A stretch of DNA of 64,000 nt. It comes from Anolis carolinensis (lineage: Eukaryota). The position numbers and the translations under genes were made by a program. This document shows positions 616 through 53,419 of this stretch, piece after piece (position 1 is the stretch's first letter; each line of letters begins with the position of its first letter). The notes beneath the pieces are model-generated. The model made no database searches and had not been told where the DNA came from. It saw only the letters and a list, made by a program, of their open reading frames with translations. Location: assembly GCF_035594765.1 (NCBI RefSeq), contig NC_085842.1, positions 19,754,782 through 19,818,781 of the forward strand, in the 5' to 3' direction.

Positions 616-754
616 CACACAAGATGAAGTTTCCAGAGTCAGCCTCCTGCTTGACCACGACACTCAGGGGTCTCTTTTCCCCTTCGGATGTTGCAGGCTC
701 TGCTTCAACCAGAGAGATGCTTGTGGGTGCCAAGGGTGGCACTGCTGTCACCAC
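616..754 (-). CDS. Gene A middle exon (139 nt, phase 0 to 1; degenerate KRAB-A-like); ZF exon lies left of the window
   Basis: Acceptor TATTTCAG|GTG, donor G|GTGAGT, open frame VVTAVPPLAPTSISLVEAEPATSEGEKRPLSVVVKQEADSGNFILC. Phases match the ESCAN exon and the paralogs. Confidence 0.8.
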
Positions 755-3052: not shown

Positions 3053-3880
3053 CCGTATATACTCGAAGATAAGCCAAGTTTTTCAGCCCTTTTATGAGCT
3101 GAAAAAGCCTCTCTCGGCTTAACCCCAACCGGGGAGCCTGGAGGCCATTGCTTGCAATATGCGATATATTTCTCTCCTCCCTTATCAGTGTGTTTTATTT
3201 TCCAGTTCCTCCATTGCTCTTAACCAAGGGAATGTTTTGAAAAGGGAAAGGAGGGGGAGAGAGGCCTTGCAAGTCAGGAAGAAAAATATATATCCATTAA
3301 TCTTATAAAAGCATTTTCCCCTGAAATATTTGTTGAACTCTTCTACAGATATATAGGCATTGACCCCCCTGCATGCATTTGCAATTCTTATGTACTTAGA
3401 AATCTGTATCTATCCATATACATTAATTTTATATATGAATTTTCCCTTCACATGTTTGCAGGTCTTTGCAAATCCTATATACATGTAGATCCATGCACCT
3501 GTANNNNNNNNNNNNNNNNNNNNNNNNNNNNNNNNNNNNNNNNNNNNNNNNNNNNNNNNNNNNNNNNNNNNNNNNNNNNNNNNNNNNNNNNNNNNNNNNN
3601 NNNNNNNNNNNNNNNNNNNNNNNNNNNNNNNNNNNNNNNNNNNNNNNNNNNNNNNNNNNNNNNNNNNNNNNNNNNNNNNNNNNNNNNNNNNNNNNNNNNN
3701 NNNNNNNNNTTTGATTAATGTAATTTTTATTGGTATCTATTTTTATTTTGAAATTTACCAGTAGCTGCTTAATTTCTCACCCTTGGCTTATACTTGGGTC
3801 AATAAGTTATTCCAGATTTTAGTGATAAAATTAGATGCCTTGGCTTATATTGAGGTCAGCTTATACTCGAGTATATACGG
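3053..3880. mobile_element. pogo/Tigger-like MITE spanning the gap
   Basis: TIRs CCGTATATACTCGA and TCGAGTATATACGG, with TA flanks. Confidence 0.75.
3504..3709. other. Assembly gap (206 N)
   Basis: Run of n. Confidence 1.
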
Positions 3881-4135: not shown

Positions 4136-4816
4136 CTGCTGCTCCCATCGCAAAGACTCTCTCTGCATCCAAAGAAAGTCCTCAGCCAGGGCCACCGCCT
4201 GGGCGCAGGTCTCGGGGCCTCGTTCCCGGACCCAGTTCTGGATCTCTGGGGGAAGGACCATCAAGAACTGCTCCAGGACCAGCAGCTCCAGGATCTGCTC
4301 CTTGGAGTGCCTCTCCACCTTCAGCCACCGCCGGCAAAGCTCCTGGAGTCGGCCGTAAACCCCCCTTGGCCCCTCGGCCTCCTGGTAGCGGAAATGCCGG
4401 AAGTGCTGACGCTGCTTCTCTCGCCTGGTGGCATCTCCTCGCAAGATGGAGGCCTTCACCTTCTCATAATCCTTCCGCTCTTGACCTTCAAGGCAGCTGA
4501 AGGCCTGCTCAGCTTCCCCGCTGAGTGCCGGCAGGAGTCGGGTCACCCACTCCTCCCTGGGCCACCGGCAGGCTTCAGCCACCTGCTCAAAGGCGGCCAG
4601 AAAGGCCTTGGCGTCGTCCCACGGAGAAGGCTCTGTGGGTATCGATGGGACATCCATCGGGGACTCTACGGTCCTCAGGAACTCCTGCCACTGGAGCTCC
4701 CATTGATGACGCCGATGCTCGCTGGATTCCTGTTTAATCTCCTCCCCGGGCTTCCTCTGGAGAAATTCTCGGATATGTTTCTCCTGGAGAAGATGAGGGG
4801 CCAACTCCGTGGCCAT
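4136..4816 (-). CDS. Gene A exon: extended SCAN (ESCAN, Gag-capsid-derived) domain of a SCAN-ZF protein
   Basis: ORF 3890-4816 has [33 protein letters not shown]...DYEKVK followed by the SCAN core [17 protein letters not shown]...[49 protein letters not shown]. Phase-0 donor CAG|GTGAG after 4136. Polypyrimidine acceptor TTTCCTTTCAG upstream, so the exon starts at 4969. Confidence 0.92.
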
Positions 4817-10512: not shown

Positions 10513-10624
10513 GTGTCCTTAAAGGAAGAAATGAATGCTGTCAAGGAAGAACAGAACCTTTTAGAAACAAGACAAGAACCACCTTTGATTAAGAAGAAGG
10601 CTGATGAAGATGACTTTAAACCAG
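10513..10624 (+). CDS. Gene B middle exon (112 nt, ends in phase 1); first in-frame ATG at 10531
   Basis: TTTTAG|GTGTCC acceptor, CCAG|GTAAAG donor, open frame VSLKEEMNAVKEEQNLLETRQEPPLIKKKADEDDFKP. Splices in frame to 12495. Confidence 0.75.
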
Positions 10625-12494: not shown

Positions 12495-13912
12495 AAGAGG
12501 AGAATATGACAAAGGAAATGGAAGAAGGCCCCCAGCAGGAAAGTCCCAAACAAGCAGGAATGGTCCTGGAAATCACCAAAAAAGAGACTTGCTTGTGCCA
12601 TGACCAGAAAGAAGCTCCTCAGACCCAAGAGCGCTTCCTATGTGAGCAAGAAACCCATTCAGATGAGATCCCTGTTGATGTTCCTCATACGAATGACCTC
12701 AGCGTAACCACAATGGACCAGGTTATTCAGAAACATGGGAACGATGAGACAAGCTCTCAGTGTGGACAGAGTTTCAGTGTGAGCCCACCTCCGAAAACCA
12801 ACCCCGGAGAGAAGCGCTACAAATGCTTGTACTGTGGGAAGGGCTTTGCGGTGAGATCAGGCCTCACTGCTCACGAGAGAACCCACACGGGTGAGAAGCC
12901 GTACACGTGTTCAGACTGCGGGAAGAGCTTTAGCGTGAGCTCCAGCCTGAAGGCCCACCGGAGGACCCACACCGGAGAGAAGCCGCACGAGTGTTCGCAC
13001 TGTGGGAAGCGGTTCTCCGTGAGCTCGACCCTCAAGAAGCACTACCGGACGCACACGGGCGAGAGGCCCTACGAGTGCTTGGTCTGCGGGGTGAACTTCC
13101 GCCAGATCGGCAGCCTGAAAGCTCACCAAAAAATCCACACAGGAGAAAAATCCTGTGAGTGCTCTGTCTGCGGGCTGGGTTTTAGCGAGCTCTCCGTCCT
13201 TTTCTCCCATTATAGGACCCACACGGGGGAAAAACCCTACAAGTGCTCCGAGTGCGGCAAGAGCTTCTACCAGAAACAGGGGCTTGCTCTGCACCTGAAG
13301 ATGCACTTCGGGGAGCGGCCGTATAAATGCTCCGAGTGCGGGAAAAGCTTCAGCGTGAGCTCACGCCTTAAGAAGCACCAGTTGATCCACACAGGAGAGA
13401 GACCCTTCCAGTGTCAGCAGTGCGGGAAAAGCTTTTGCTCGAGCACGGATCTCATCATCCACGAGAGAGCCCACGCCGGGGACAAGCCCTATCAGTGCTC
13501 TTTTTGTGGGAAAAGGTTCTGCCGTACCTCGGAGGTGGTCAGCCACGAGAGAATCCACACAGGGGAGAAACCCTACAAATGCCTGGAGTGTGGGAAGAGC
13601 TTCAGCGTCAGCTCGCGGCTGAGTACACACAAGAGAGTTCACACAGGGGAGCGGCCGTTCAAATGCTCGCAGTGTGGAAGGACTTTCACCTACAAGGCCC
13701 ACCTGGTTGCCCACGAGAGGATCCACACGGGAGAGAGGCCGTACACATGCTCAGTGTGCGGGAAGACCTTTCGGGTGCGCGACTGCCTCATGGTACATGA
13801 GAGAATCCACACCGGGGAGAAGCCTTTCAAATGCTTAGACTGTGGCAAAAGCTTCCGGAACAGCTCTTCTCTGGTCCAGCACCAAAGAATACACGCAGAA
13901 CGGAACAAATAA
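12495..13912 (+). CDS. Gene B terminal exon: 13 tandem C2H2 zinc fingers
   Basis: ORF 12506-13912 has 13 CxxC-x12-HxxxH repeats with TGE(K/R)P-type linkers. Phase-1 acceptor ACAG|AA at 12494/12495. Confidence 0.95.
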
Positions 13913-21855: not shown

Positions 21856-22548
21856 ATGTCTTCGAAAGAGGAGGAGGAAGAGGTGGCTATACCCTTGGCT
21901 CCCCATGAATATTTTCCGGTCAAGAAGACAGTGGACCAACAACACCCCACAAGTCCCTTGGGACATGGAGATGCCTCGGAGGGCATGGAAATGATGAGCA
22001 ACCATGTGGTGAAAAAGGAAGACATGGTGACGTTGGCAACATCTTGTCCAGAACCAAATCGCCCACATCTCCTGGACACTCCGCATTCGGACGATATATA
22101 CCTGACGCCCGCTGAGAAGGCCATCATTAGCCATCCGGGGAAATGGATATCTCGTCTCCTCCCAGGCCTCAAGGAGGAAGGGCAGAGGCTATTTGAGGAG
22201 CGGGAGGCAGGGGACTACGGGAAGGTGAAGGCAGCTATTTTGAAGGTGGACGCCATCGGCACTGAGGTCCAGCGGCAGCACTTCCGGCTGTTTCAATATA
22301 AGGAGGCCGACGGGCCCCGCGAAGCCTGCAGCCGGCTCTGGTTCCTTTGCCATCGGTGGTTGAAGCCCGAGCGGCACACCAAGGAGCAGATCCTGGAGCT
22401 GTTGATCCTGGAGCAGTTCTTGGCCATCCTTCCTCCAGAGATCCAGAATTGGGTCAAAGACGGCTGCCCGGAGACCTGTGCCCAAGCGGTGACTTTGGCG
22501 GAGGAGTTTCTGCTGAAGCCACGAGAGGCGGAGAGGCCAACACAGCAG
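21856..22548 (+). CDS. Gene C exon: SCAN domain with eroded ESCAN N-lobe
   Basis: ORF 21835-22674 contains [10 protein letters not shown]...[10 protein letters not shown]...[64 protein letters not shown] at 21856. Phase-0 donor CAG|GTGATC after 22548. Confidence 0.9.
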
Positions 22549-22620
22549 GTGATCCTGGTGATTCTGTCATCCTATATCCTGTGGAGATACAAGAGTCTGG
22601 AAACTTTCATGGTGCCCAAC

Positions 22621-23983: not shown

Positions 23984-24107
23984 GTGCCAGGATCTCTTGA
24001 AGAGCCAATCGGGAGCTCTCCTGTGGTGGACAAAGCGCCGTTGGAAGCCAACCAAGAAGTGGACCAGGAGGTCAAGCAAGAGACCGTTATGGATGGCATC
24101 TCCATGG
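23984..24107 (+). CDS. Gene C middle exon (124 nt, phase 0 to 1; degenerate KRAB-A-like)
   Basis: Strong acceptor TTCTCTTTTTCAG|GTG and donor ATGG|GTAAGG. Frame VPGSLEEPIGSSPVVDKAPLEANQEVDQEVKQETVMDGISM. Confidence 0.85.
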
Positions 24108-28416: not shown

Positions 28417-29459
28417 GGGTGGAAGGAACCCCTTGGGCCATTTAGTCCAACCCCCTTCTGCCTTTGTGCTGTGGGGGCCGGTTAAATGGCTTTGATGTGC
28501 CGCAAGTGGCCTGCGGGCCATAGTTTGGGGGTAAGGAGAGAAGGCACGATCATCAAGTTTGCAGACGACACAAAACTGGGAGGGATAGCTAACACTCCAG
28601 AAGACAGGAGCAGAATTCAAAACGATCTTGACAGACTAGAGAGATGGGCCAAAACTAACAAAATGAAGTTCAACAGGGACAAATGCAAGATACTTCACTT
28701 CGGCAGAAAAAATGGCAATCAAAGATACAGAATGGGGGACGCCTGGCTTGACAGCAGTGTGTGCGAAAAAGACCTTGGAGTCCTCGTGGACAACAAGTTA
28801 AACATGAGCCAACAATGTGATGCGGCTGCTAAAAAAGCCAATGGGATTCTGGCCTGCATCAATAGGGGAATAGCGTCTAGATCCAGGGAAGTTATGCTCC
28901 CCCTCTATTCTGCCTTGGTCAGACCACACCTGGAATACTGTGTCCAATTTTGGGCACCACAGTTGAAGGGAGATGTTGACAAGCTGGAAAGCGTCCAGAG
29001 GAGGGCGACTAAAATGATTAAGGGTCTGGAGAACAAGCCCTATGAGGAGCGGCTTAAAGAGCTTGGCATGTTTAGCCTGCAGAAGAGAAGGCTGAGAGGA
29101 GACATGATAGCCATGTACAAATACGTGACGGGAAGTCATAGGGAGGAGGGAGCAAGCTTGTTTTCTGCTGCCCTGCAGACTAGGACACGGAACAATGGCT
29201 TCAAACTACAGGAAAGGAGATTCCACTTGAACATCAGGAAGAACTTCCTCACTGTGAGGGCTGTTCGACAGTGGAACTCTCTCCCCGGCGCCGTGGTGGA
29301 GGCTCCTTCCTTGGAGGCTTTTAAGCAGAGGCTGGATGGCCATCTGTCGGGGGTGCTTTGAATGTGATTTCCTGCTTCTTAGCAGGGGGTTGGACTAGAT
29401 GGCCCATGTGGTCTCTTCCAACTCTACTATTCTATGATTCTATGATTCTATGACCCCTG
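27795..29459. mobile_element. hAT non-autonomous element whose right TIR is split by a CR1 insertion
   Basis: Left TIR CAGGGGTCCCCAAAC. Right TIR GTTTGGGG (28523-28530) ... ACCCCTG (29453-29459). Internal (AAT)n tracts. Confidence 0.7.
28538..29452 (+). mobile_element. Young 5'-truncated CR1 LINE (RT C-terminal part intact)
   Basis: Uninterrupted frame from IIKFADDTKLGG to LDGHLSGVL and an (ATTCTATG)n tail. Confidence 0.95.
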
Positions 29460-34092: not shown

Positions 34093-34835
34093 TTATAGTC
34101 CACTATCGGCAGGTGTTTCCGCTGCGTGGGTTTTTTTGTGCAGCATAAGAAGAGAGATCTGACAGAAGCTTTCCTCACATTCGGGGCAGGAGTATGTTTT
34201 CCGGTGGAGGTGGGACCTCTGGTGCCGAGTGAGGTACGACTTGCAGACAAATCCCTTGCCACAGTCTGAACACCGGAAGGGCCTCTCGCCGGAGTGGATG
34301 CGCCTGTGGTGGAGGAACCCAGAGCGGGAGCTGAACCCGTTCCCGCAGACTGAGCAGCTGTACGGCTTTTCCCCGGTGTGGATCCTCTGGTGACGGGCCA
34401 GGTCCGACATCCACACAAAGCTTTTCTCGCAAGCAGAACAGTCGTAGAATGTGTTCCCACTGTGGGCCTTTTGGTGCGCAGTCAGGTGCTTCTTCTGCTC
34501 GAAGCTTTCACCACACTCGGCACACAGGTACCTCATCTCTCCATTGCTGTTTTTAACCTTCTTGAAAAGCCCTAATTTTGTCAAGGGTTTACCAACCGCA
34601 CCACCAGTCTTCAGGTGAGGCCCTGGTTCTGTCTCAGGAGAGATCTTGTCTCTGGGTTTATCCCCATTGGTTCTGAATCCATCTCCCGGCTTCCTTTTTG
34701 GGTTGTGAAGGTTCTCGGGTGCTTTGGCCACATCCTGTCCATCTGAAAGCTCCTCTCTCACTCTGCATGGGTCGCATTCTTCAGGGATACCTTGGCAATT
34801 GGGGGTCACTCTGTTTTCACTTGCCTGCCCCAAAT
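34093..34835 (-). CDS. ZF exon D: 5 C2H2 fingers, no own SCAN or middle exon found
   Basis: ORF 34093-34833 has five fingers (CAEC, CSAC, CSVC, CSDC, CPEC). Long polypyrimidine phase-1 acceptor TTTTTTATTCCATTAG|AT. Confidence 0.88.
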
Positions 34836-38113: not shown

Positions 38114-38787
38114 CTAGCGTGCCGTGTGGATTCTTTGGTGTCTGTTAAGGCACGTGTTGCGAGAGAACCTCTTCCCGCACACGGGACACTCGTGCGGCCT
38201 CTCCCCCGTATGGATTCTGCGGTGAGTGTTAAGGTTCGCTTTCTGGCTGAAGCTTTTCCCGCAGCGCAGGCACTCGTAGGGCCTCTCCCCAGTGTGGATT
38301 CTCTGGTGAGTATTAAGGTAGGAGTTGCGAGAGAAGCGCTTCCCGCAAGTGGGGCACTTGTGGGGCCTCTCACTTTCACACCTTTTATGGTGCCCAAGGA
38401 GCTGGAATTTCTGACTGAATCGTTTTCCACAGTCCAAGCATTTAAAGGGCTTTTCTCCTGAGTAGACGCTCTCATGTTTAATGAGGCTCGGGCTCTGACC
38501 AAACTTTTTCCTAAGCACACCGTAGATACTCGGTCTCTTACCAGGGTACATCCTCCGCTGGAACACATCTTCCTTCAAGTCCTGCAACGGTCCCCCCAAC
38601 GGGACAGATAGAGCTACTTCTTGCCCTGAGCTGAGCTCCAGGTGACTCCCTAGAATGGCTCTCTGCTCACAAAACTGGGGGGGATTCTCTGCTGATCGCC
38701 AAACGGTTGGCCCGTGGGGTGCCAATTGCTCAGAAGCTTCTGGTGGAAATTCTTCTCCTTCCGCTATAGTCATCCACCCTTTAGCAC
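38114..38787 (-). CDS. Gene E terminal exon: 3 canonical C2H2 fingers, 1 C2HC-type finger, 1 decayed finger
   Basis: From ORF 38114-38947. Phase-1 acceptor after a T-rich tract, TTCCCTCCAG|GT. Minus-strand AATAAA at 37945-37950. Confidence 0.9.
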
Positions 38788-39402
38788 CTGGAGGGAAAAA
38801 AAAGACAAAAATCACTTGTGGAGGGATGACTCTACACATAATGCAGCTACCTAGACAGGAAACAAATAGTGGAATGAAAACATCATCTATACACATAAAA
38901 AAGTGAAAATACTGTATGTATGTTTTGTGTGTGGCTGGGGTGTCCACTTACACGGACAAGCTCCTGCCTCCACATACAGCTATAGCTCCCACTGCTCAGG
39001 AAACACCAAAGCCCCTCCTTCCAATGACATTGCAGGTTATAGCGAGTACCGTGAACATCCCCAAGAGCCCTGCCAATGTCCTTCGTAAACATCATACTGC
39101 TCACCACACAAGTGAAGACTTTCATATGGAGACAATTGCACCCTAGTTTTTGTGTTTTTCCCCCACCACAGGTATCCCAGTGTCCTCTCTCTCTCCATTG
39201 GTGTGCCATTTGAATGACCCCACCCACTGCCTCTCCCATAACCCTTTCCTATTCTTTTTTATGGCACACAGCAAATTGAGGAATTGATCAGCAACTGAAC
39301 ATACTAGAGAAGTTTGGAAAATCTGAAGTTATGAGATCCCTGCCAGGGCCAAACTGGATAGTCTCAAGGGTCATTCTCAAATCTAATAGCTTATATTCTC
39401 AC

Positions 39403-39535
39403 CCATCAAGATGGCCTCGCCACTGCCCTCCTCTTGCTTGGTCTCCTTGGGTAGCTGCCTGTAACCGGTGGGAGCAGATGGAGCAGCTTCAGGGTCACAG
39501 AATCTCAAAGCCACTTCCTCAAAGGCTGGTGTGAT
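39403..39535 (-). CDS. Gene E middle exon (133 nt, phase 0 to 1): recognisable degenerate KRAB-A
   Basis: TTTTTCCAG|ATC acceptor, ATGG|GTGAGA donor. Translates ITPAFEEVALRFCDPEAAPSAPTGYRQLPKETKQEEGSGEAILM. Confidence 0.85.
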
Positions 39536-39579
39536 CTGGAAAAACAGGCAAGATGTTTTTCAGGGCAGAAGGACAGGGT

Positions 39580-40870
39580 CTAGGACTCATTCAGGTGGTC
39601 TCGGGGACCAAGCTCTGTATGTGAATAGGGTTTGGAGCTTATTCAGGTGACATTAGGGACCAAGCTCTGTATGTGAACAGGATTTGGGGTTTATCCAAGA
39701 GGTCTTAGTGACTGAGCTCTGTATATGAACAGCATTTAGAGTTTATTCAGGAGGTCGTAGTGACTGAGTGCTATATGTTAAAAGAGTTTGGGACTTATTT
39801 AGTGTTGGAAATAGCAACCTCCCAAGTCTTTCACTATTTATTTGTTAATGTATATATTTGCTAACCTGTATTCTATGTGTATGTTGATTTGCCAGTTTGA
39901 CTGTACCTCTTTGGTATGGGAGGGGTTATAGACATGTGATTGTACTTAGCATGTTCAGACTCAAGACTCCATTTTATATTCAGTGTGATTATAGACTTCA
40001 ATGTGTTAAGTCTGCTTTACACCTCAGTGGAGGTGGATGAATGAGTTTGCATCAAACCTCAGTGGTGGTGGATGCATGTTGCTGTTTTGGACTTCAATAG
40101 AGAAGTATGACTTATGGACTTCAGTGAGTACAACTATATCTAAAGAGTATGGACTATTGATTAAGAATGATATCCTGTGTACTCAACACAGAAAGAGAAC
40201 TACATCCTATCTATAACTAAACTTCAATAAGAAATGTCCCTGTATGGTGAATTAATACAAGATGTTTAAGAGTAAACAAGATATGTTATTTTCAAAAGAA
40301 GACTTTGGTTTTTTAATTTTTGAGTGCTTATTTTGAACTAAGAAATTGGATAATTAGAATTGCAACTGCAACTTCAAAGAAACAACCATCCTCTGCTAAC
40401 CAAATATATTTTTGTCGTGGCATGTCTTTGTCCTTGGCAGTTCAAAGACATGGTTCTTTAGCTTAATAGCTGAGTTACCTGTGTGCCATTACATGAATGC
40501 TCATGAATATCACTTGTTCAAAGGGTTGACTTCTAACAAGGTCATGCTTTTCTTGACTAGTGGTTTTGAAAAGGTGGTCTCCACATGTTCATGGAGATTC
40601 ACATTTGCCAAACGGATATGACATCATTTTTCAATAATGTTACGATTGCCATTTATTTCCAAAGGGATAGGTGTCCAGAGACTGGGTGCAGTTATTTCCA
40701 ATATTTAGGCAGTCTTAGGGACCAAGCCCTGTACCTGAGTGACATTTAAGGTTTATTCAGCTGTTCTTATAGACCAAACTCTGTATGTGAATTGGGTTTG
40801 GGATATATCCAGGTAGTCTTAGGGACTGAGCTCTGGTTTTGAACAGGTTTTGGGGTTCATTCAACTTGTC
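39580..40870. repeat. Diverged 52-bp tandem array split by an LTR
   Basis: GAC(C/T)(A/G)AGCTCTGTATGTGAA-type units at 39606, 39658, 39710, 39762 and 40720, 40772, 40824. Confidence 0.8.
39803..40703. mobile_element. Solo LTR-like element, 901 bp
   Basis: TGTTGGAAATA...TATTTCCAATA inverted ends. 5-bp TSD TTTAG at 39798-39802 and 40704-40708. Confidence 0.75.
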
Positions 40871-40935
40871 TGTATGTCTTAGGGATGGACATCTGAATGT
40901 AAACATGTCTCAGTGTGTGTATCTCGCTCTCCCAC

Positions 40936-41676
40936 CTGAGTTTTCTGTCGCTGTACCTCTCTCTGGACCTGCAGGAAGTTCTCAGCCAAGGCCACTGCCT
41001 GGGCGCAGGTCTCGGGGCCTCGTTCCCTGACCCAGCTCTGGATCTCGGGAGGCAAGACGGTCAGGAACTGCTCCAGGATCAGCAGCTCCAAGATCTGCTC
41101 TTTCGTGTGCTTCTCCACCTTCAGCCACCGGCGGCAAAGATCCTGGAGTCGACCGTAAGCCCCTCTGGGACCCTCGGCCTCCTGGTAACAGAAGTGCCTG
41201 AAATGCTGGCGCCTTTTCTCCCTGTTGAGGGCAGCCCCCCGCAAGATGGCCACCTTTACTCTCCCATAATCCTTTCTGTCTCGAGCTTCCAGCCGGTTGA
41301 AAGCCTGTTGTGCTTCTCCGCGGAGGGCCGGAAGGAGCCGGGTGACCCACTCCTCCCTGGGCCACCGGCAGGCCTCAGCCACTTGCTCGAAGGAGGCCAG
41401 GAAGGCCTTGGCGTCATCCCATGGGGCAGGCTCCTCCGGCAACGGTGGGAGCCCCCAGCCTGAGCAAGGAGACTCCACTTCCTTCAGGAACTCTTGCCAC
41501 TGGACCTCCCAGCGCTGAATGAGACCTTCATCAGCCTCCTCTTTAATCTGCGGCACCGGCATCTTATGGAGGAATTCACGGATGCAGCTCCTCTCGATGG
41601 CATGTGGAGACTTTCTGGCCCCTTCCAATCCTTCTACTGGTTTGGGGTCGACTTGGCGTGTCTCCTCCATTTTCAT
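40936..41676 (-). CDS. Gene E exon: extended SCAN (ESCAN)
   Basis: From ORF 40879-41838. MKMEE start at 41676, with an alternative ATG at 41697. [33 protein letters not shown] plus the SCAN core. Phase-0 donor CAG|GTGGGA. Confidence 0.92.
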
Positions 41677-44554
41677 CCCTGGTGGACTTCTCTGCATGGA
41701 AGGGTTCACGGACAAGATGGGGGCACAAGCAGAGAATTCGCGTTTTGGAAGACCAGAATCAAAGGCCCTGAGAGAGAAAGGATTGGAGACACATGAGAAA
41801 ATTGACCGCAGCTTCAGGAACTCTGTTTGTAACTTCACAATGCTACACTTCTATTTGAACTTACTCATATGGAATCTGTAAGAAAGGGAAGATGTAGGGA
41901 ACATGAAATCTCTAGGTTCTCCAGCATAACTGGAGGAGGATGACTACAGAATCAGACTGGGGGACCTAGCAATTCTAGAGGGAACATTTTTAGCAAATCT
42001 GTGAATAATCAAATCCACAAATCAAAACCTCAAATGTGCATCTGTATGAGGTATATTTACAGTAGAGTCTCACTTCTCCAAGACTCGCTTATGCAAGCTT
42101 CTGGATTATCCAAGACAATTTTGTAGTCAATATTTTCAATATATCATAATATTTTGGTGCTAAATTCATAAATATAGTAATTACAACATAACATTACTGT
42201 GTACTGAACTACTTTTTCTGTCAAATTTGTTGTATAACATGATGTCTTGGTGCTCAATTTGTAAAATCATAACCTAATTTGATGTTTAATAGGGTTTTCC
42301 TTAATCCCTCCTTATTATCCAAGATATTCACTTATCCAAGGTTCTGCCCATTTAGCTTGGATAAGTGAGAGACTACTCTATATATCCCACTGTAAGGTAC
42401 TGCAGAACCACTTCAGCAACATTAGTCCCCAGTGCGCAATGGGTTAAACCCTTGTGCCGGCAGTCGAATTCGGGGAGTAGGATAAGCTCCTGTCTGTCAG
42501 CTCCAGCTTTCCATGCAGGGACATGAGAGAAGCCTCCCACAAGGATGGTAAAACATCAAACATGTGGGCATCCCCTAGGCAATGTCCTTGCAGGCGGCCA
42601 ACTCTCTCACACCAGAAGCGTCTTGCAGGTTCTCAAGTTGCTCCTGACAAGAAAAAAGGCCACTCAAAAGAGAATCTTGGAAATACAGTAGAGTCTTGCT
42701 TATCCAACATAAACGAGCCAGCAGAACATTGGATAAGCGAAAATGTTGGATAATAAGGAGGGATCATGGATAATCTTGTTAAACTTCAAATTACGTTATG
42801 GTTTAACAAATTAAGCACCAAAACATCATGTTTTACAACAAAATGACAGAAAAAAGCAATTCAATAAATGGTAACTTATGTAGTAATTACTATATTTACT
42901 AATTTAGCACCAAAATATCGCAATGTATTGAAAACATTGGCTACAAAACATTTGACTACTGTAAGGCAGATTACGTTGGATAAGCGAGATTCTACTGTAG
43001 TTTTATTATTGCCTAGGTTTCTACAGCTAATGGAGCTTTTGTGCAAAAGTTCTAGTTTTCTGCCCCCTGAATTTCAACCCCCCCTTCCCTTGTAGCCATG
43101 GCAACCCAGGTCAAAGCAACTCCCACCAGTCCTCCTCCCAAAAATTCTTATCAGTCCTTTCTCATGAGAAGCTTTCCAAATGTCCAGGGGTATCTTTCTC
43201 TCCTCCTCAGCCCTTGACCTGTCATGGAGGAATTATGGTGGATTTTCAGAACATCAGAATGCCGCCATGACACTCACTCTTTAACCACAAAGACTTGATT
43301 GTGCCATCTGTATATATAAAAGTCAAAATATGAATGTCTGTCTGTCTGTCCGTCTGTACCACAAAGGCTGCTGTTAGGTGAAGTGGCCCTCTGTGAAGCC
43401 ATTGGGTAAGAAAGGTGGCCTATGTATGAGGGCAAGGGAGAGGGGAAGGAAAATGAAATGGAAAGGAAGAAAGGGAGCGGGGAGAGAGAAAAAAAAGAAA
43501 AACAGACATAGGAAAGGGAAAAGGTATGAGGGGAGGGAAAGAGAAAGCAGCAACCCCTTTGATACTTAGGAAACACCAGGTATATATGCTAGTTTTATAC
43601 GCGGATCCATAGTAGCGCAATGGGTTAAACCCTTAGAATTGAAGAAATGCAGTACTACCATTCTCCACTTGAAGTACAGTGCCACTATCAGAAAGAAAAG
43701 GCTTATCTATATATAGGAAAAGCACCTGCACCCCACTTTTAGAGATGTTTATGGGGGGTGTTTCTTAGAATTCAAGAAATAAGGACATTCTAACCAGCTT
43801 AGTATGGATATGGAGATAATGAGAGGTATAGATATAGGTATATATAGCGAGAGAGAGAGAGAGAAGTGGATGAGGTTTTATAGCTCCAGTCCCTCCAACC
43901 ACTGGGTCATGCCCAATTTGGCCTCTGTTTCCCTCTTACCTAGAACCACCCCAAATTAATCTCCAGTTTTGCTAATGTAAGTACACATTATGTAGAGAAA
44001 TTAAATTATTTATTACATGCCCACCTTGATTCTCCATTCTGGTTATAGATTTGAGGCAGATTAAGTTTTTTCTAGCATCCGTAAGAAGCAACAGTAAAAG
44101 ACACACTGACGGTTTTCCTACCATCTTGCTTAAAAGAAAACAACCTTATGTTGAGTTACCAATATATCTGTTGATCACCAAAGATGGGTGACCAACCATT
44201 TCTGGATGATGTAACAAAAATTAATTAAACACAAGTCCTGATTAATATCTAAAAGGAGACAGGGTTCGATTCAAGCCCTTCAAGTTCAAGCGGTTGGTTG
44301 GTTTGAGTAGGAAAGAGTTGTGAAATAACATTGAAAACCACTGCATCACGACATAGACTCTGCTAAGAATGCCATAGCAGAGGGTACCTCTATACCAGGC
44401 ATGGGCAAACTTGGGCCCTCGGGTGTTTTGGACTTCAACTCCCACAATTCCTAACAGCCTACTGGCTCTACACTGTAGAATTAACCCAGTTTGGCATCAC
44501 TTTTAAATACCAAGGAATAATGAGAGTTGTAGCTTGAAGCCCAGCAGAAAAAGC

Positions 44555-50260: not shown

Positions 50261-50372
50261 TTAAAAGCACAGCATCGCTTCTTGGTCTCGTTTCCCTGCA
50301 TAGCAGTTGTGGCCGGAGATCAGATGAACAACCAGAGAAACTCACAGCCATCTCCACGAATGGCGTCAGCAT
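50261..50372 (-). CDS. Gene F middle exon (112 nt, phase 0 to 1): degenerate KRAB-A-like
   Basis: CATTTCAG|ATG acceptor, TTAA|GTAAGT donor. Translates MLTPFVEMAVSFSGCSSDLRPQLLCRETRPRSDAVLL. Confidence 0.8.
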
Positions 50373-52300: not shown

Positions 52301-52690
52301 TTATTTTTCTATCCCGCCACCATCTCCCCAAAGGGACTTGGGGTAGCTGACATGGGGCTAAACCCAAACACAAAAAAATCTGATAAATAAAACCAATATA
52401 AAAACAATATCAACAGAACATTCAGATATAACAAACAAATTAAAAACACAAAATACAAAAACACCATAGGAACCAGATAGGGAAGGTAATAAAAACGAAC
52501 ATCGCCATCAATGGATAAAATACCCAAAACACCTGGAGGGCCCAAGTTTGCCCATGCCTCCTAACTCCAGCAAATATGGAGATCTGGCTGTTGCAGATAG
52601 TATACAGCTGTGCAGTATTATAGATTTAAAATCCTTGTTTGCGTGTTTTGCCTCTACTGTGAATTAAAGCATCACTATACATCTCCGCAC

Positions 52691-53419
52691 CTGTTTGTCC
52701 TCTCTTTCGTCCTCTTGCTGCCGGAGCTGGAACTCCTCGGCCAAGGCCACGGCCTGTGCACAGGTCTCCGGCCCGTGTTCCCGGACCCACCTCTGCATTT
52801 CCCGAGGCAAGATGGTCAGCAGCTGCTCCAGGACCAGCAGCTCCAGGATCTGCTCCTTGGAGTGCCTCTCCACCCGCAGCCACCCACGGCACAGCTCCCA
52901 CAGCTGGCTGTAGGCCCCCCGCGGCCCCTCGACCTCCCGGTAGCAGAACCGGCGGAAGTGCTGCCGCTGCTTCTCCCTCCGGAGGGTGTCCTGGCGCAAG
53001 ATAGCCGCCTCGACCTTCCCGTAATCCTCCCGGTCTTGAGCCTCCAGGCTGTGAAAGGCCTGCTCGGCCTCCCCGTGAAGGGCAGGCATGAGGCGGACAG
53101 CCCACTCCTCCTTGGGCCACCGGCAGGCTTTGGCCACTTGCTCGAAGGAGGCCAGGAAGGCCCTGGTGTCGTCCCACGGGGCGGCCTCCTCCATGAACGG
53201 CGGGCCTCCCCATCCGGAAGAAGGCGATTCAACCCTCTCCAGGAACTCATGCCATTGGTGATCCCACCGCTGGAAGTGGCCATCGTCTTTCTCCTTTTTA
53301 ATCCGCTCTTCCAGTCTCTCCTGCGGGAACATGCCGATATTCCTGGCCTGCAGGACATAGGGTCCCTCGAAGCCGTTCCTTAAGATGCTGCTCATGGGGT
53401 CTTGTTCCTCCATTTTCAT
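52691..53419 (-). CDS. Gene F exon: extended SCAN (ESCAN)
   Basis: From ORF 52664-53434. MKMEE ATG at 53419. [33 protein letters not shown] plus the SCAN core. Donor CAG|GTGCGG. Acceptor TTTTTAG, so the exon starts at 53455. Confidence 0.92.

What the first reader, a model, noticed from the sequence alone, without database searches (positions are those of the whole stretch)
39403..39535. Hidden decayed KRAB-A exons; in three genes the TRIM28-binding VMxE motif has become a SUMO-like (V/T)KQE
Seen: all five genes have one 112-139 nt exon just before the ZF exon (616-754, 10513-10624, 23984-24107, 39403-39535, 50261-50372), and the ORF track misses all of them. Each ends in phase 1; in A, C, E and F it follows a phase-0 SCAN donor. 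Gene E reads FEEVALRFCDPEAAPSAPTGYRQLPKETKQEE...LMG and gene F reads PFVEMAVSFS...D...QLLCRET. Established: KRAB-A is encoded by a roughly 127-nt phase 0-to-1 exon with a consensus like VTFEEVAVYFxxEEWALLDPxQRxLYREVM(L/Q)ENY...SLG, and its (D/E)V and MLE motifs are needed for TRIM28-dependent repression. Inference: these exons are KRAB-A relics. At the VMxE position genes A, C and E all read KQE (VVKQE, EVKQE, ETKQE), although the rest of the exon has diverged heavily. ATG to AAG is a single change, and it creates a psi-K-x-E SUMO consensus in A and C. This suggests a lizard ESCAN-ZF subfamily that swapped TRIM28 recruitment for SUMO-dependent regulation.
Basis: partly seen in the sequence, partly recalled or inferred. 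Interest (0 to 1): 0.82.

Follow-up and report, generated by a model that had tools for sequence, protein, structure and literature searches.

The report
Decayed KRAB exon keeps a lysine motif
In green anole SCAN zinc-finger genes, the short exon before the finger exon is a worn-down KRAB-A box whose TRIM28-contacting methionine is now a lysine in a K-x-E motif, the best-kept part of the exon across lizards and snakes and probably a SUMO attachment site, though that is untested.

Summary
The window is Anolis carolinensis. All five short exons have good AG/GT sites, are open in frame 0 and end in phase 1. Exons C and E are spliced exactly as proposed in public annotated anole proteins, and exon F in a cluster representative labelled Anolis sagrei.

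None of the five peptides is detectable as KRAB alone. With relatives the KRAB-A origin is clear:
- Four squamate family members pass Pfam's KRAB threshold.
- A profile of 74 such exons matches a canonical KRAB-A profile end to end (hhalign 96.8%, P 2.5e-10).
- The lysine falls exactly under the M of VMLE.

- The exons are not hidden from annotation.
- SCAN-KRAB zinc-finger genes are already the largest published anole ZNF class (Liu et al. 2014).
- The M-to-K change was not acquired separately by three genes. It is inherited across a large squamate clade, and genes F and B have since lost the motif.

New here: K and the E two residues on are the slowest-changing columns of the exon. They are followed by an acidic tail, and a second strict psi-K-x-E sits before the SCAN domain.

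SUMOylation and loss of TRIM28 binding remain inference.

The parts
39403..39535 (-). Gene E KRAB-A relic exon (133 nt, phase 0 to 1)
   Evidence: Splice sites; translation; present in annotated P0001 residues 255-298; E 1.4e-11 against the squamate exon profile and 8e-07 against a profile of Pfam-KRAB-positive members only; E-clade profile vs canonical KRAB-A: 92.8%, P 3.8e-07
39431..39442 (-). Gene E T-K-Q-E codons (ACC AAG CAA GAG), aligned to V-M-L-E of KRAB-A
   Evidence: Read; register
40936..41697 (-). Gene E coding part of the SCAN exon, phase-0 donor after ...QKTQ
   Evidence: Pfam SCAN 3.1e-39; equals P0001 residues 1-254
41536..41547 (-). Gene E N-terminal strict psi-K-x-E (I-K-E-E), 10 residues before the N-lobe WEVQWQEF
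   Evidence: P0001 residues 51-54; the same motif is present in 88 of 99 squamate relatives
38114..38787 (-). Gene E zinc-finger exon (acceptor in phase 1, ...G|AKGW...)
   Evidence: Pfam zf-C2H2; junction in P0001.
616..754 (-). Gene A KRAB-A relic exon (139 nt)
   Evidence: 67.5% identical to the exon of Sceloporus P0035; E 1.2e-09 vs the squamate exon profile; direct clade-vs-canonical test not significant (P 0.11) but in the same register
644..655 (-). Gene A V-K-Q-E codons (GTC AAG CAG GAG), strict psi-K-x-E
   Evidence: Read; translation
4136..4816 (-). Gene A SCAN exon (ORF part up to ...WEQQ)
   Evidence: Pfam SCAN 2.2e-39; 78% identical to P0035
10513..10624 (+). Gene B exon (112 nt); the relic position reads I-K-K-K (E lost); two other psi-K-x-E motifs (LKEE, VKEE) lie in its first half
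   Evidence: rank 13, E 0.25; the best ZF relative, P0237, reads F-V-K-Q-E at that place; weakest of the five
23984..24107 (+). Gene C KRAB-A relic exon (124 nt)
   Evidence: in annotated P0121; C-clade profile vs canonical KRAB-A: 75.6%, P 2.4e-05
24071..24082 (+). Gene C V-K-Q-E codons (GTC AAG CAA GAG); K and E invariant in 10 squamate orthologues
21856..22551 (+). Gene C SCAN exon coding part, phase-0 donor after ...PTQQ
   Evidence: Pfam SCAN 4e-41; 100% identical to P0121 residues 1-232
50261..50372 (-). Gene F KRAB-A relic exon (112 nt); keeps the N-terminal PFVEMAVSFS half, K-x-E lost (reads ETRPR)
   Evidence: 100% identical to P0115 residues 244-280; E 2.5e-09; F-clade vs canonical KRAB-A: 73.3%, P 3e-05 over the N-terminal half only
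52688..53419 (-). Gene F SCAN exon coding part
   Evidence: Pfam SCAN 2e-39; 94% identical to P0115

Best explanation
Each of these Anolis carolinensis SCAN zinc-finger genes keeps the old KRAB-A exon in its original place and phase, directly after the SCAN exon and before the finger exon.

Shown: the exon descends from KRAB-A. Most residues that contact TRIM28/KAP1 in canonical KRAB have decayed. The contact methionine of V-M-L-E is a lysine. That state is shared by descent across a large squamate SCAN-ZNF clade rather than gained separately in genes A, C and E. K and the glutamate two residues later are the slowest-evolving positions of the exon, and an acidic run follows them.

Inferred: the folded, TRIM28-binding domain has shrunk to a disordered acidic linker carrying a short linear motif, (V/I/T/A)-K-(Q/E)-E-acidic. 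This motif is most likely a SUMO acceptor site of the acidic-tail type. Together with a second strict (V/I)-K-(Q/E)-E motif in front of the SCAN domain, it would give these factors SUMO-dependent, TRIM28-independent repression or regulation.

Gene F's lineage lost the lysine motif but kept the N-terminal half of the box. Gene B lost the glutamate.

My odds: KRAB-A descent and the M/K register about 0.9; shared ancestry of K about 0.85; SUMO acceptor function about 0.4.
For: Descent from KRAB-A:
- 7 of 61 squamate post-SCAN exon peptides hit Pfam KRAB on their own. The best is 2.9e-07 at 30.4 bits, and four exceed the 20.4-bit cut-off.
- A joint MAFFT alignment with 56 canonical KRAB-A boxes is collinear over the full length.
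- hhalign gives 96.8%, P 2.5e-10, and still 96.2%, P 2.6e-09 without the Pfam-positive members.
- Clade profiles: E 92.8%, C 75.6%, F 73.3%.
- Same exon position and phase as KRAB-A.

Register:
- Pfam's ungapped match to HMM positions 2-29 puts T-K-E-E on positions 30-33.
- hhalign puts E~KqE under dVMlE.

Retention:
- The K column holds K in 49 of 61 sequences and E(+2) in 47 of 61, the lowest entropies in the exon.
- On a SCAN tree of 109 relic-class proteins, E(+2) changes 0.117 and K 0.135 times per tip, against typically 0.3-0.5.
- In 10 gene C orthologues from gecko to snakes, the only invariant exon columns are one E, the K and E(+2).

Shared ancestry: only 3 K/M changes over 107 tips.

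SUMO-like features:
- K-x-[ED] in 80 of 86 K rows, and 2.24 acidic residues in the next 6 columns against 0.82 expected.
- A second strict psi-K-x-E in 88 of 99 relatives.

Literature:
- Met33, Val32, Tyr29, Leu21, Phe13, Ile11, Val9 and Asp8 of ZNF93 KRAB contact KAP1 and are needed for silencing (PMC9753469).
- DV and MLE are essential for KAP1 binding (PMC3971581).
- SUMOylation motifs were important for repression in at least 149 of 166 human repression domains, and a 10-residue IKEE tile suffices (bioRxiv 10.1101/2022.08.26.505496).
- Variant-KRAB ZNF746 does not stably bind TRIM28 and needs a SUMO-acceptor lysine next to its KRAB (PMC6923878).
Against: - No experiment or proteomic datum shows SUMO on this lysine.
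- Only 31 of 86 K-bearing members have V/I/L/M/F before K. T (33), A (13) and P (7) are poorer Ubc9 contexts, and gene E itself reads T-K-Q-E.
- K and E codons are purine-rich, so an exonic splicing enhancer could add nucleotide-level constraint.
- Alignment to an HMM can anchor on K-x-E and inflate its apparent conservation.
- Alone, the five window peptides are not significant against Pfam or a canonical KRAB HMM. Gene A's clade test is not significant (P 0.11) and gene B is marginal.
- A profile of the family did not retrieve KRAB chains from the PDB.
- Exon inclusion was not confirmed with RNA reads.
- The SCAN tree has 94 columns and many unresolved forks.
Confidence: 0.5

Rival explanations
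1. The exon is a KRAB-A relic, but the conserved K-x-E serves another lysine- or charge-centred role. Candidates are a different modification (acetylation, ubiquitin), a CK2-type T-x-x-E site in the T-K-Q-E forms, a contact with the neighbouring SCAN domain, or a residual partner interface. It would not be a SUMO site.
For: Most K-bearing members lack a strict hydrophobic residue before K (55 of 86). E at -2 is also common (52 of 86), which the classical SUMO consensus does not require. R is the commonest replacement for K (8 rows).
Against: K-x-E with an acidic tail is the defining core of the SUMO acceptor motif. The strict V/I forms recur in deep clades such as gene C. The same tetrapeptide (V/I)K(Q/E)E recurs independently before the SCAN domain. 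Such motifs are the commonest short repression determinants in human factors.
Confidence: 0.25
2. The conservation is at nucleotide level. The purine-rich AAG-CAA/CAG-GAG-GA stretch would be an exonic splicing enhancer that keeps a short, otherwise free-drifting linker exon included, and the protein motif would be a by-product.
For: The exons are short (112-139 nt) and the conserved codons are purine-rich. The rest of the exon evolves fast.
Against: The equally purine-rich neighbouring acidic columns change three to four times as often as K and E(+2). Conservation is residue-specific: K in 86 of 104 and E in 88 of 103. F-lineage genes keep the exon spliced without the motif.
Confidence: 0.1
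3. The relic is still a working, if weak, variant KRAB that recruits TRIM28, and the lysine is tolerated at the interface.
For: The N-terminal F-E-E-V-A-V-x-F segment is still recognisable in E and F. Four paralogous family members pass Pfam's KRAB threshold.
Against: Gene E has lost at least three of the eight residues that contact KAP1 in the crystal structure, namely Met33 (now K), Val32 (now T) and Tyr29 (now P); my rough reading is that Leu21 is gone too. Genes A and C have lost nearly all of them. A separate squamate SCAN-KRAB class keeps the canonical box, showing what a maintained interface looks like.
Confidence: 0.05
4. The exons are ordinary acidic linker exons unrelated to KRAB, and the resemblance is chance.
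For: Single peptides give no Pfam hit at E up to 10 and are not significant against a canonical KRAB-A HMM. The family profile finds no KRAB chain in the PDB.
Against: Profile-profile match is P 2.5e-10 over 41 collinear columns. There is a graded series from Pfam-positive members to the window's exons. Exon position and phase are identical to KRAB-A.
Confidence: 0.03

Closest known systems
SCAN-KRAB-ZNF genes of Anolis carolinensis (Liu, Chang, Sun, Lu & Stubbs 2014, PMC3971581)
   Same: Same species and architecture: SCAN exon, KRAB-A exon, finger exon. That paper counted 240 SCAN-KRAB and 89 SCAN-only ZNF models, and noted that the lizard KRAB-A consensus deviates in the MLE cluster, so KAP1 binding cannot be assumed.
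   Different: The window's genes fall below single-sequence HMM detection, so they would probably be counted as SCAN-only there. The paper describes loss of the central leucine. It does not describe the M-to-K change, its K-x-E-acidic context or its selective retention.
Canonical KRAB-A box (Pfam PF01352; ZNF93 KRAB-KAP1 structure 7Z36, PMC9753469)
   Same: Homologous over the full 41 columns, with the same exon phase and a similar length. The N-terminal (V)xFE(E/D)VAVxF and the central QRxL are still visible in the family consensus.
   Different: The KAP1 contacts Met33, Val32, Tyr29 and Leu21 and the EEW segment are replaced. The C-terminal half is acidic and carries K-x-E instead of V-M-L-E-N-Y.
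Variant KRAB of DUF3669-KRAB proteins ZNF746/PARIS and ZNF777 (PMC6923878)
   Same: An old, oligomerising N-terminal domain plus a non-canonical KRAB with no stable TRIM28 association. Repression depends on a SUMO-acceptor lysine (K189R abolishes it).
   Different: There the acceptor lysine lies in a separate exon downstream of the KRAB. Here the candidate lysine sits inside the former KRAB-A box, at the methionine that used to touch TRIM28. The partner domain is SCAN, not DUF3669.
Short SUMOylation-motif repression domains (SP3 and MGA IKEE; DelRosso et al., bioRxiv 10.1101/2022.08.26.505496)
   Same: A psi-K-x-E core in a disordered acidic context within a transcription factor. Such motifs are necessary, and sometimes sufficient, for repression.
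   Different: Those are human and experimentally tested. The squamate motif is untested and has a non-hydrophobic residue before K in about two thirds of members.
Mammalian SCAN-KRAB proteins (ZNF287, ZNF483, ZKSCAN7) seen
   Same: SCAN followed by a KRAB-A-type exon.
   Different: At the M column the sampled mammalian proteins read M, L, T and a few other residues or gaps (VMLE, MMLE, VLLE, VTLQ, IVPE, IRPE), never K. Their SCAN domains form a separate side of the tree (99% support).

Membership tests
KRAB-A box (PF01352) | Single-sequence match to the Pfam KRAB model at or above the gathering score (20.4 bits) | tested here: not met
   0 hits at E up to 10 for all five window peptides. Met by paralogous family members P0086 (30.4 bits), P0072 (25.1), P0054 (23.5) and P0109 (23.0).
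KRAB-A box (PF01352) | Homology to canonical KRAB-A shown by profile-profile comparison | tested here: met
   Family profile vs 56 canonical boxes: 96.8%, P 2.5e-10, 41 columns. E clade P 3.8e-07, C clade P 2.4e-05, F clade P 3e-05, A clade not significant.
KRAB-A box (PF01352) | Encoded by one exon of about 127 nt, phase 0 to 1, upstream of the finger exon | tested here: met
   112-139 nt, all 3n+1, between the SCAN and ZF exons. The 127-nt norm is taken from general knowledge.
KRAB-A box (PF01352) | KAP1-binding residues (D/E)V and M-L-E present | tested here: not met
   (D/E)V survives as EV in E only. MLE reads KQE in A, C and E, KKK in B and RPR in F.
KRAB-A box (PF01352) | Binds TRIM28/KAP1 and represses through it | not testable with these tools
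   Needs co-IP and tethering assays.
SUMO acceptor motif (psi-K-x-E, acidic-tail type) | Large hydrophobic residue immediately before K | tested here: inconclusive
   Met in A (V), C (V) and B (I). Not met in E (T). F has no K. Family-wide: 31 of 86.
SUMO acceptor motif (psi-K-x-E, acidic-tail type) | K with E or D at +2 | tested here: met
   A, C and E yes; B and F no. Family-wide: 80 of 86 K rows.
SUMO acceptor motif (psi-K-x-E, acidic-tail type) | Cluster of acidic residues downstream | tested here: met
   2.24 acidic residues in the next 6 columns against 0.82 expected from the rest of the exon.
SUMO acceptor motif (psi-K-x-E, acidic-tail type) | Lysine actually conjugated to SUMO by Ubc9 | not testable with these tools
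   No lizard SUMO proteomics at hand. Needs an assay.
SCAN-domain C2H2 zinc-finger proteins | SCAN domain (PF02023) upstream of a C2H2 array in one gene | tested here: met
   SCAN at E 2e-39 to 4e-41 in A, C, E and F, and zf-C2H2 arrays in B, C, E and F. A's finger exon lies off the window. No SCAN exon was found for B in the window.

The most novel reading that the evidence does not exclude
A whole squamate radiation of SCAN zinc-finger genes, seen here in geckos, skinks, lacertids, amphisbaenians, anguimorphs, iguanians and snakes, converted a folded co-repressor-binding domain into a short linear motif by one ATG-to-AAG step. The methionine that plugged into TRIM28 became the acceptor lysine of a SUMO site, so silencing moved from TRIM28 recruitment to SUMO-dependent repression. 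A second SUMO site before the SCAN domain would bracket the oligomerisation module. This would be a natural, datable case of domain-to-motif exchange of repression mechanism in hundreds of genes.
Probability: 0.3. Interest if true: 0.75.

Novelty: new variant of a known kind. Interest (0 to 1): 0.55.

Why it matters
KRAB zinc-finger proteins are the largest family of vertebrate repressors. Why many old or non-mammalian members do not use TRIM28 is an open question.

This locus gives a concrete, testable answer for one large reptile group. The box decayed, yet one lysine-glutamate pair at the former TRIM28 contact stayed under the strongest constraint. It lies in exactly the context that short SUMO-dependent repression domains have in human factors.

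If confirmed, many anole genes now labelled SCAN-only would be reclassified as SCAN-KRAB descendants. It would also give a clean natural pair for dissecting TRIM28-dependent against SUMO-dependent silencing: the canonical EVM(L/Q/E)EN class against the (V/T)KQE class within one genome.

If SUMO is not involved, the result is still a tidy annotation point: the exon's origin is settled, and a conserved motif of unknown role is flagged.

Tried and rejected
- Pfam hmmscan of the five peptides alone: nothing at E up to 10.
- The five peptides against my own canonical KRAB-A HMM: not significant. E scored 0.25, F 2.0, and the rest were at noise level.
- Profile of the family against all PDB sequences: only spurious repeat proteins, no KRAB chain.
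- phmmer of the best Pfam-positive member (P0086) against the PDB: no KRAB chain.
Four runs hold 0.47-0.49 of the sampled words, close to the exon share (0.46) of the queried stretch. I do not count this as evidence.
- Search for a canonical KRAB start or a SCAN exon for gene B in the window: none.
- Emerson & Thomas 2011 (PMC3209298) is not held.
- Three independent M-to-K events: rejected by the tree.
- Generic linker unrelated to KRAB: rejected.
Exons were handled one by one by reference, and spliced forms come from public annotated proteins.
- The N run at 3504-3709 was left alone.

Full report
WHAT IS THERE

The window is from Anolis carolinensis. The ORF holding gene E's SCAN exon is 100% identical to the annotated 522-residue 'zinc finger and SCAN domain-containing protein 31' (P0001). 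Pfam finds SCAN domains in four ORFs (genes A, C, E, F) and C2H2 arrays in genes B, C, D, E and F.

All have a polypyrimidine tract with AG in front and a GT donor behind. All are 3n+1 nt long.

Gene models:
- In P0001 the junctions are ...QKTQ | ITPAFEE...ILM-G | AKGW....
- In P0121 (A. carolinensis H9GV36) they are ...PTQQ | VPGSLEE...GISM | AQLC....
- Exon F is 100% identical to residues 244-280 of P0115, a cluster representative labelled Anolis sagrei.
- So exons C and E are in public anole gene models and exon F in that cluster representative; all are invisible only to an ORF list.
- Exon A has orthologous exons in Sceloporus and Pogona proteins.
- Exon B rests on splice signals and weak similarity.

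Against chance: of 1,473 open AG...GT phase 0-to-1 candidates in the window, a profile built from other squamates' exons ranks the five loci first, at ranks 1-14 including overlapping variants.

IS IT KRAB-A?

Alone, no. Pfam gives nothing at E up to 10, and a canonical KRAB-A HMM I built from 56 boxes gives E-values of 0.25 or worse.

With relatives, yes:
- The stretch after the SCAN domain in 120 squamate SCAN-ZNF proteins forms a graded series. It runs from clearly KRAB-like forms (V-A-F-E-E-V-A-V-N-F-S-E-A-E ... E-Q-R-Q-L-Y-x-E-T-K-Q-E ... L-L-G) down to the window's versions.
- Seven of 61 such peptides hit Pfam KRAB individually. Of the five whose scores I retrieved, four are above the gathering score.
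- An unsupervised joint alignment of canonical and squamate peptides is collinear.
- hhalign of the two profiles gives 96.8% probability, P 2.5e-10, over 41 of 43 columns. Without the Pfam-positive members it still gives 96.2%, P 2.6e-09.
- Clade profiles: gene E's four orthologues 92.8% (P 3.8e-07); gene C's ten orthologues 75.6% (P 2.4e-05); gene F's five relatives 73.3% (P 3e-05, N-terminal half only); gene A's two relatives not significant.
- A is tied to the family by the exon profile (E 1.2e-09). B is tied only weakly (E 0.25).

REGISTER OF THE LYSINE

Three lines agree that K sits under the M of V-M-L-E:
- Pfam aligns P0086 residues 4-31 to HMM positions 2-29 without gaps, which places T-K-E-E on positions 30-33.
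- MAFFT places K under M.
- hhalign places E~KqE under dVMlE.

ONE EVENT OR THREE?

On a SCAN-domain tree of 143 proteins, mammalian SCAN-KRAB proteins form one side and squamates the other (99% support). Within squamates:
- A class that keeps a canonical box reading E-V-M-(L/Q/E)-E-N forms one clade (95% support).
- The K state fills the rest, including the ZSCAN2-like clade of gene C and a 94-row clade holding the relatives of A, E and F.

K versus M needs only three changes over 107 labelled tips. One of these is a nested apparent back-change (P0112, T-M-Q-E). The tree is short and poorly resolved, so one to three origins are possible. Genes A, C and E inherited the lysine; they did not each invent it.

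SELECTIVE RETENTION

- In the first alignment, K (49 of 61) and E(+2) (47 of 61) have the lowest entropies in the exon.
- Counting parsimony changes per column on the tree for 109 relic-class proteins, E(+2) (0.117 per tip) and K (0.135) are the slowest of 45 columns. Most columns run at 0.3-0.5.
- In the ten 1:1 orthologues of gene C, from a gecko to snakes, the only invariant exon columns are one glutamate near the start, the lysine and E(+2). The flanking L-(E/D)-(V/I) columns are at 80% or more.
- Caveat: HMM alignment may anchor on K-x-E. The small-clade alignments do not depend on that.

Losses:
- In gene F's lineage E-T-K-Q decays to E-T-K-P and E-T-R-P, while the N-terminal P-F-V-E-V-A-V-S-F-S half stays conserved.
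- Gene B reads I-K-K-K where its nearest finger relative P0237 reads F-V-K-Q-E.

HOW IT MOST LIKELY WORKS

In the ZNF93 KRAB-KAP1 crystal structure, Asp8, Val9, Ile11, Phe13, Leu21, Tyr29, Val32 and Met33 make the interface and are required for silencing (PMC9753469). DV and MLE are the classical essential clusters (PMC3971581).

In gene E, Met33, Val32 and Tyr29 are replaced (by K, T and P), and by my rough reading Leu21 as well. In A and C almost all eight are replaced. Loss of canonical TRIM28 binding is therefore a strong inference, but it is not shown.

What remains conserved is K-x-E: 80 of 86 K rows, with an acidic tail of 2.24 acidic residues per 6 columns against 0.82 expected. This is the core of the SUMO acceptor consensus in its acidic-tail form (general knowledge).

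Supporting points:
- A second, strict (V/I)-K-(Q/E)-E motif lies ten residues before the SCAN N-lobe in 88 of 99 relatives, and in genes A, C, E and F. Two such motifs thus bracket the SCAN domain.
- In human factors, SUMOylation motifs were important for repression in at least 149 of 166 repression domains, and a ten-residue IKEE tile is sufficient.
- ZNF746, which has a variant KRAB and no stable TRIM28 association, loses repression on K189R at a SUMO site next to its KRAB.

Weak point: only 31 of 86 K rows have a hydrophobic residue before K, and gene E has T.

I put SUMO acceptor function at about 0.4, another lysine- or charge-centred role at about 0.25, a splicing-enhancer by-product at about 0.1, and retained TRIM28 binding at about 0.05.

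WHAT IS KNOWN AND WHAT IS NEW

Already published:
- SCAN-KRAB-ZNF genes are the largest Anolis ZNF class, at 240 models, and the lizard KRAB-A consensus is known to deviate in MLE.
- Variant KRABs without TRIM28 binding.
- SUMO-motif repression domains.

Not found in the literature searched:
- The contact methionine is a lysine across a large squamate clade.
- K and E(+2) are the most constrained residues of a decaying box.
- Genes below HMM detection ('SCAN-only') still carry the relic.

I class this as a new variant of a known kind.

LIMITS AND HOUSEKEEPING

- Local scripts did scan the whole window file for candidate exons and ran one tblastn against it.
- The assembly gap at 3504-3709 was left untouched.
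- Sampling outside squamates was limited to 18 mammalian SCAN-KRAB proteins, so I make no claim that the K state is absent elsewhere.
- One word-search and the large representative search were left unused.

Noticed in passing
window 41536-41547 (-) in gene E; also in the SCAN-exon ORFs of A (EEIKQESS), C (VVKKED) and F (RIKKEK): A second, strict psi-K-x-E motif, (V/I)K(Q/E)E plus acidic residues, sits about 10 residues before the SCAN N-lobe motif WExQWQEF. It is present in 88 of 99 squamate relatives against a 28% background per 30-residue window. Two SUMO-type motifs therefore bracket the SCAN domain.
   Followed up: partly
proteins P0149, P0157, P0163 (A. carolinensis), P0165, P0185, P0195, P0203, P0205, P0206, P0214, P0220, P0236, P0239: A separate squamate SCAN-KRAB class keeps a canonical KRAB-A box reading EVM(L/Q/E)EN (P0163 itself reads VTEE) and forms one clade on the SCAN tree. 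It is a natural control for the K class within the same genomes.
   Followed up: partly
window 10513-10624 (+) and 12506-13912 (+), gene B: No SCAN exon for gene B was found anywhere upstream in the window, although its closest finger relative (P0237, Rhineura) has one. B's relic reads IKKK (glutamate lost), but its first half carries two other psi-K-x-E motifs (LKEE, VKEE).
   Followed up: partly
window 50261-50372 (-), gene F and relatives P0115, P0039, P0033, P0006, P0011: This lineage lost the K-x-E motif stepwise (TKQ, TKP, TRP/TNP) but conserves the N-terminal half PFVEVAVSFS of the old box. The two halves of the relic appear to be under separate constraints.
   Followed up: partly
protein P0112 (Podarcis muralis): Reads T-M-Q-E at the motif while nested deep inside the K clade, next to P0083 (T-K-E-E). 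This looks like a K-to-M back-change.
   Followed up: no
window 28486-29361 (+): 291-codon ORF with a weak reverse-transcriptase (RVT_1) match, E 4.7e-04, below Pfam's cut-off. Probably a retroelement fragment between genes C and D.
   Followed up: no
window 34093-34833 (-): A C2H2 finger ORF (gene D) with no SCAN or KRAB-like exon of its own found nearby. Another first-stage note reads it as an alternative last exon of gene E. Not examined here.
   Followed up: no
window 3504-3709: Run of 206 N inside gene A's intron, between the relic exon and the SCAN exon. Left as is.
   Followed up: no
window 38114-41838, runs X11-X14: Four runs from three studies hold 0.47-0.49 of the sampled words, close to the 0.46 share that the three exons make of the stretch.
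   Followed up: no
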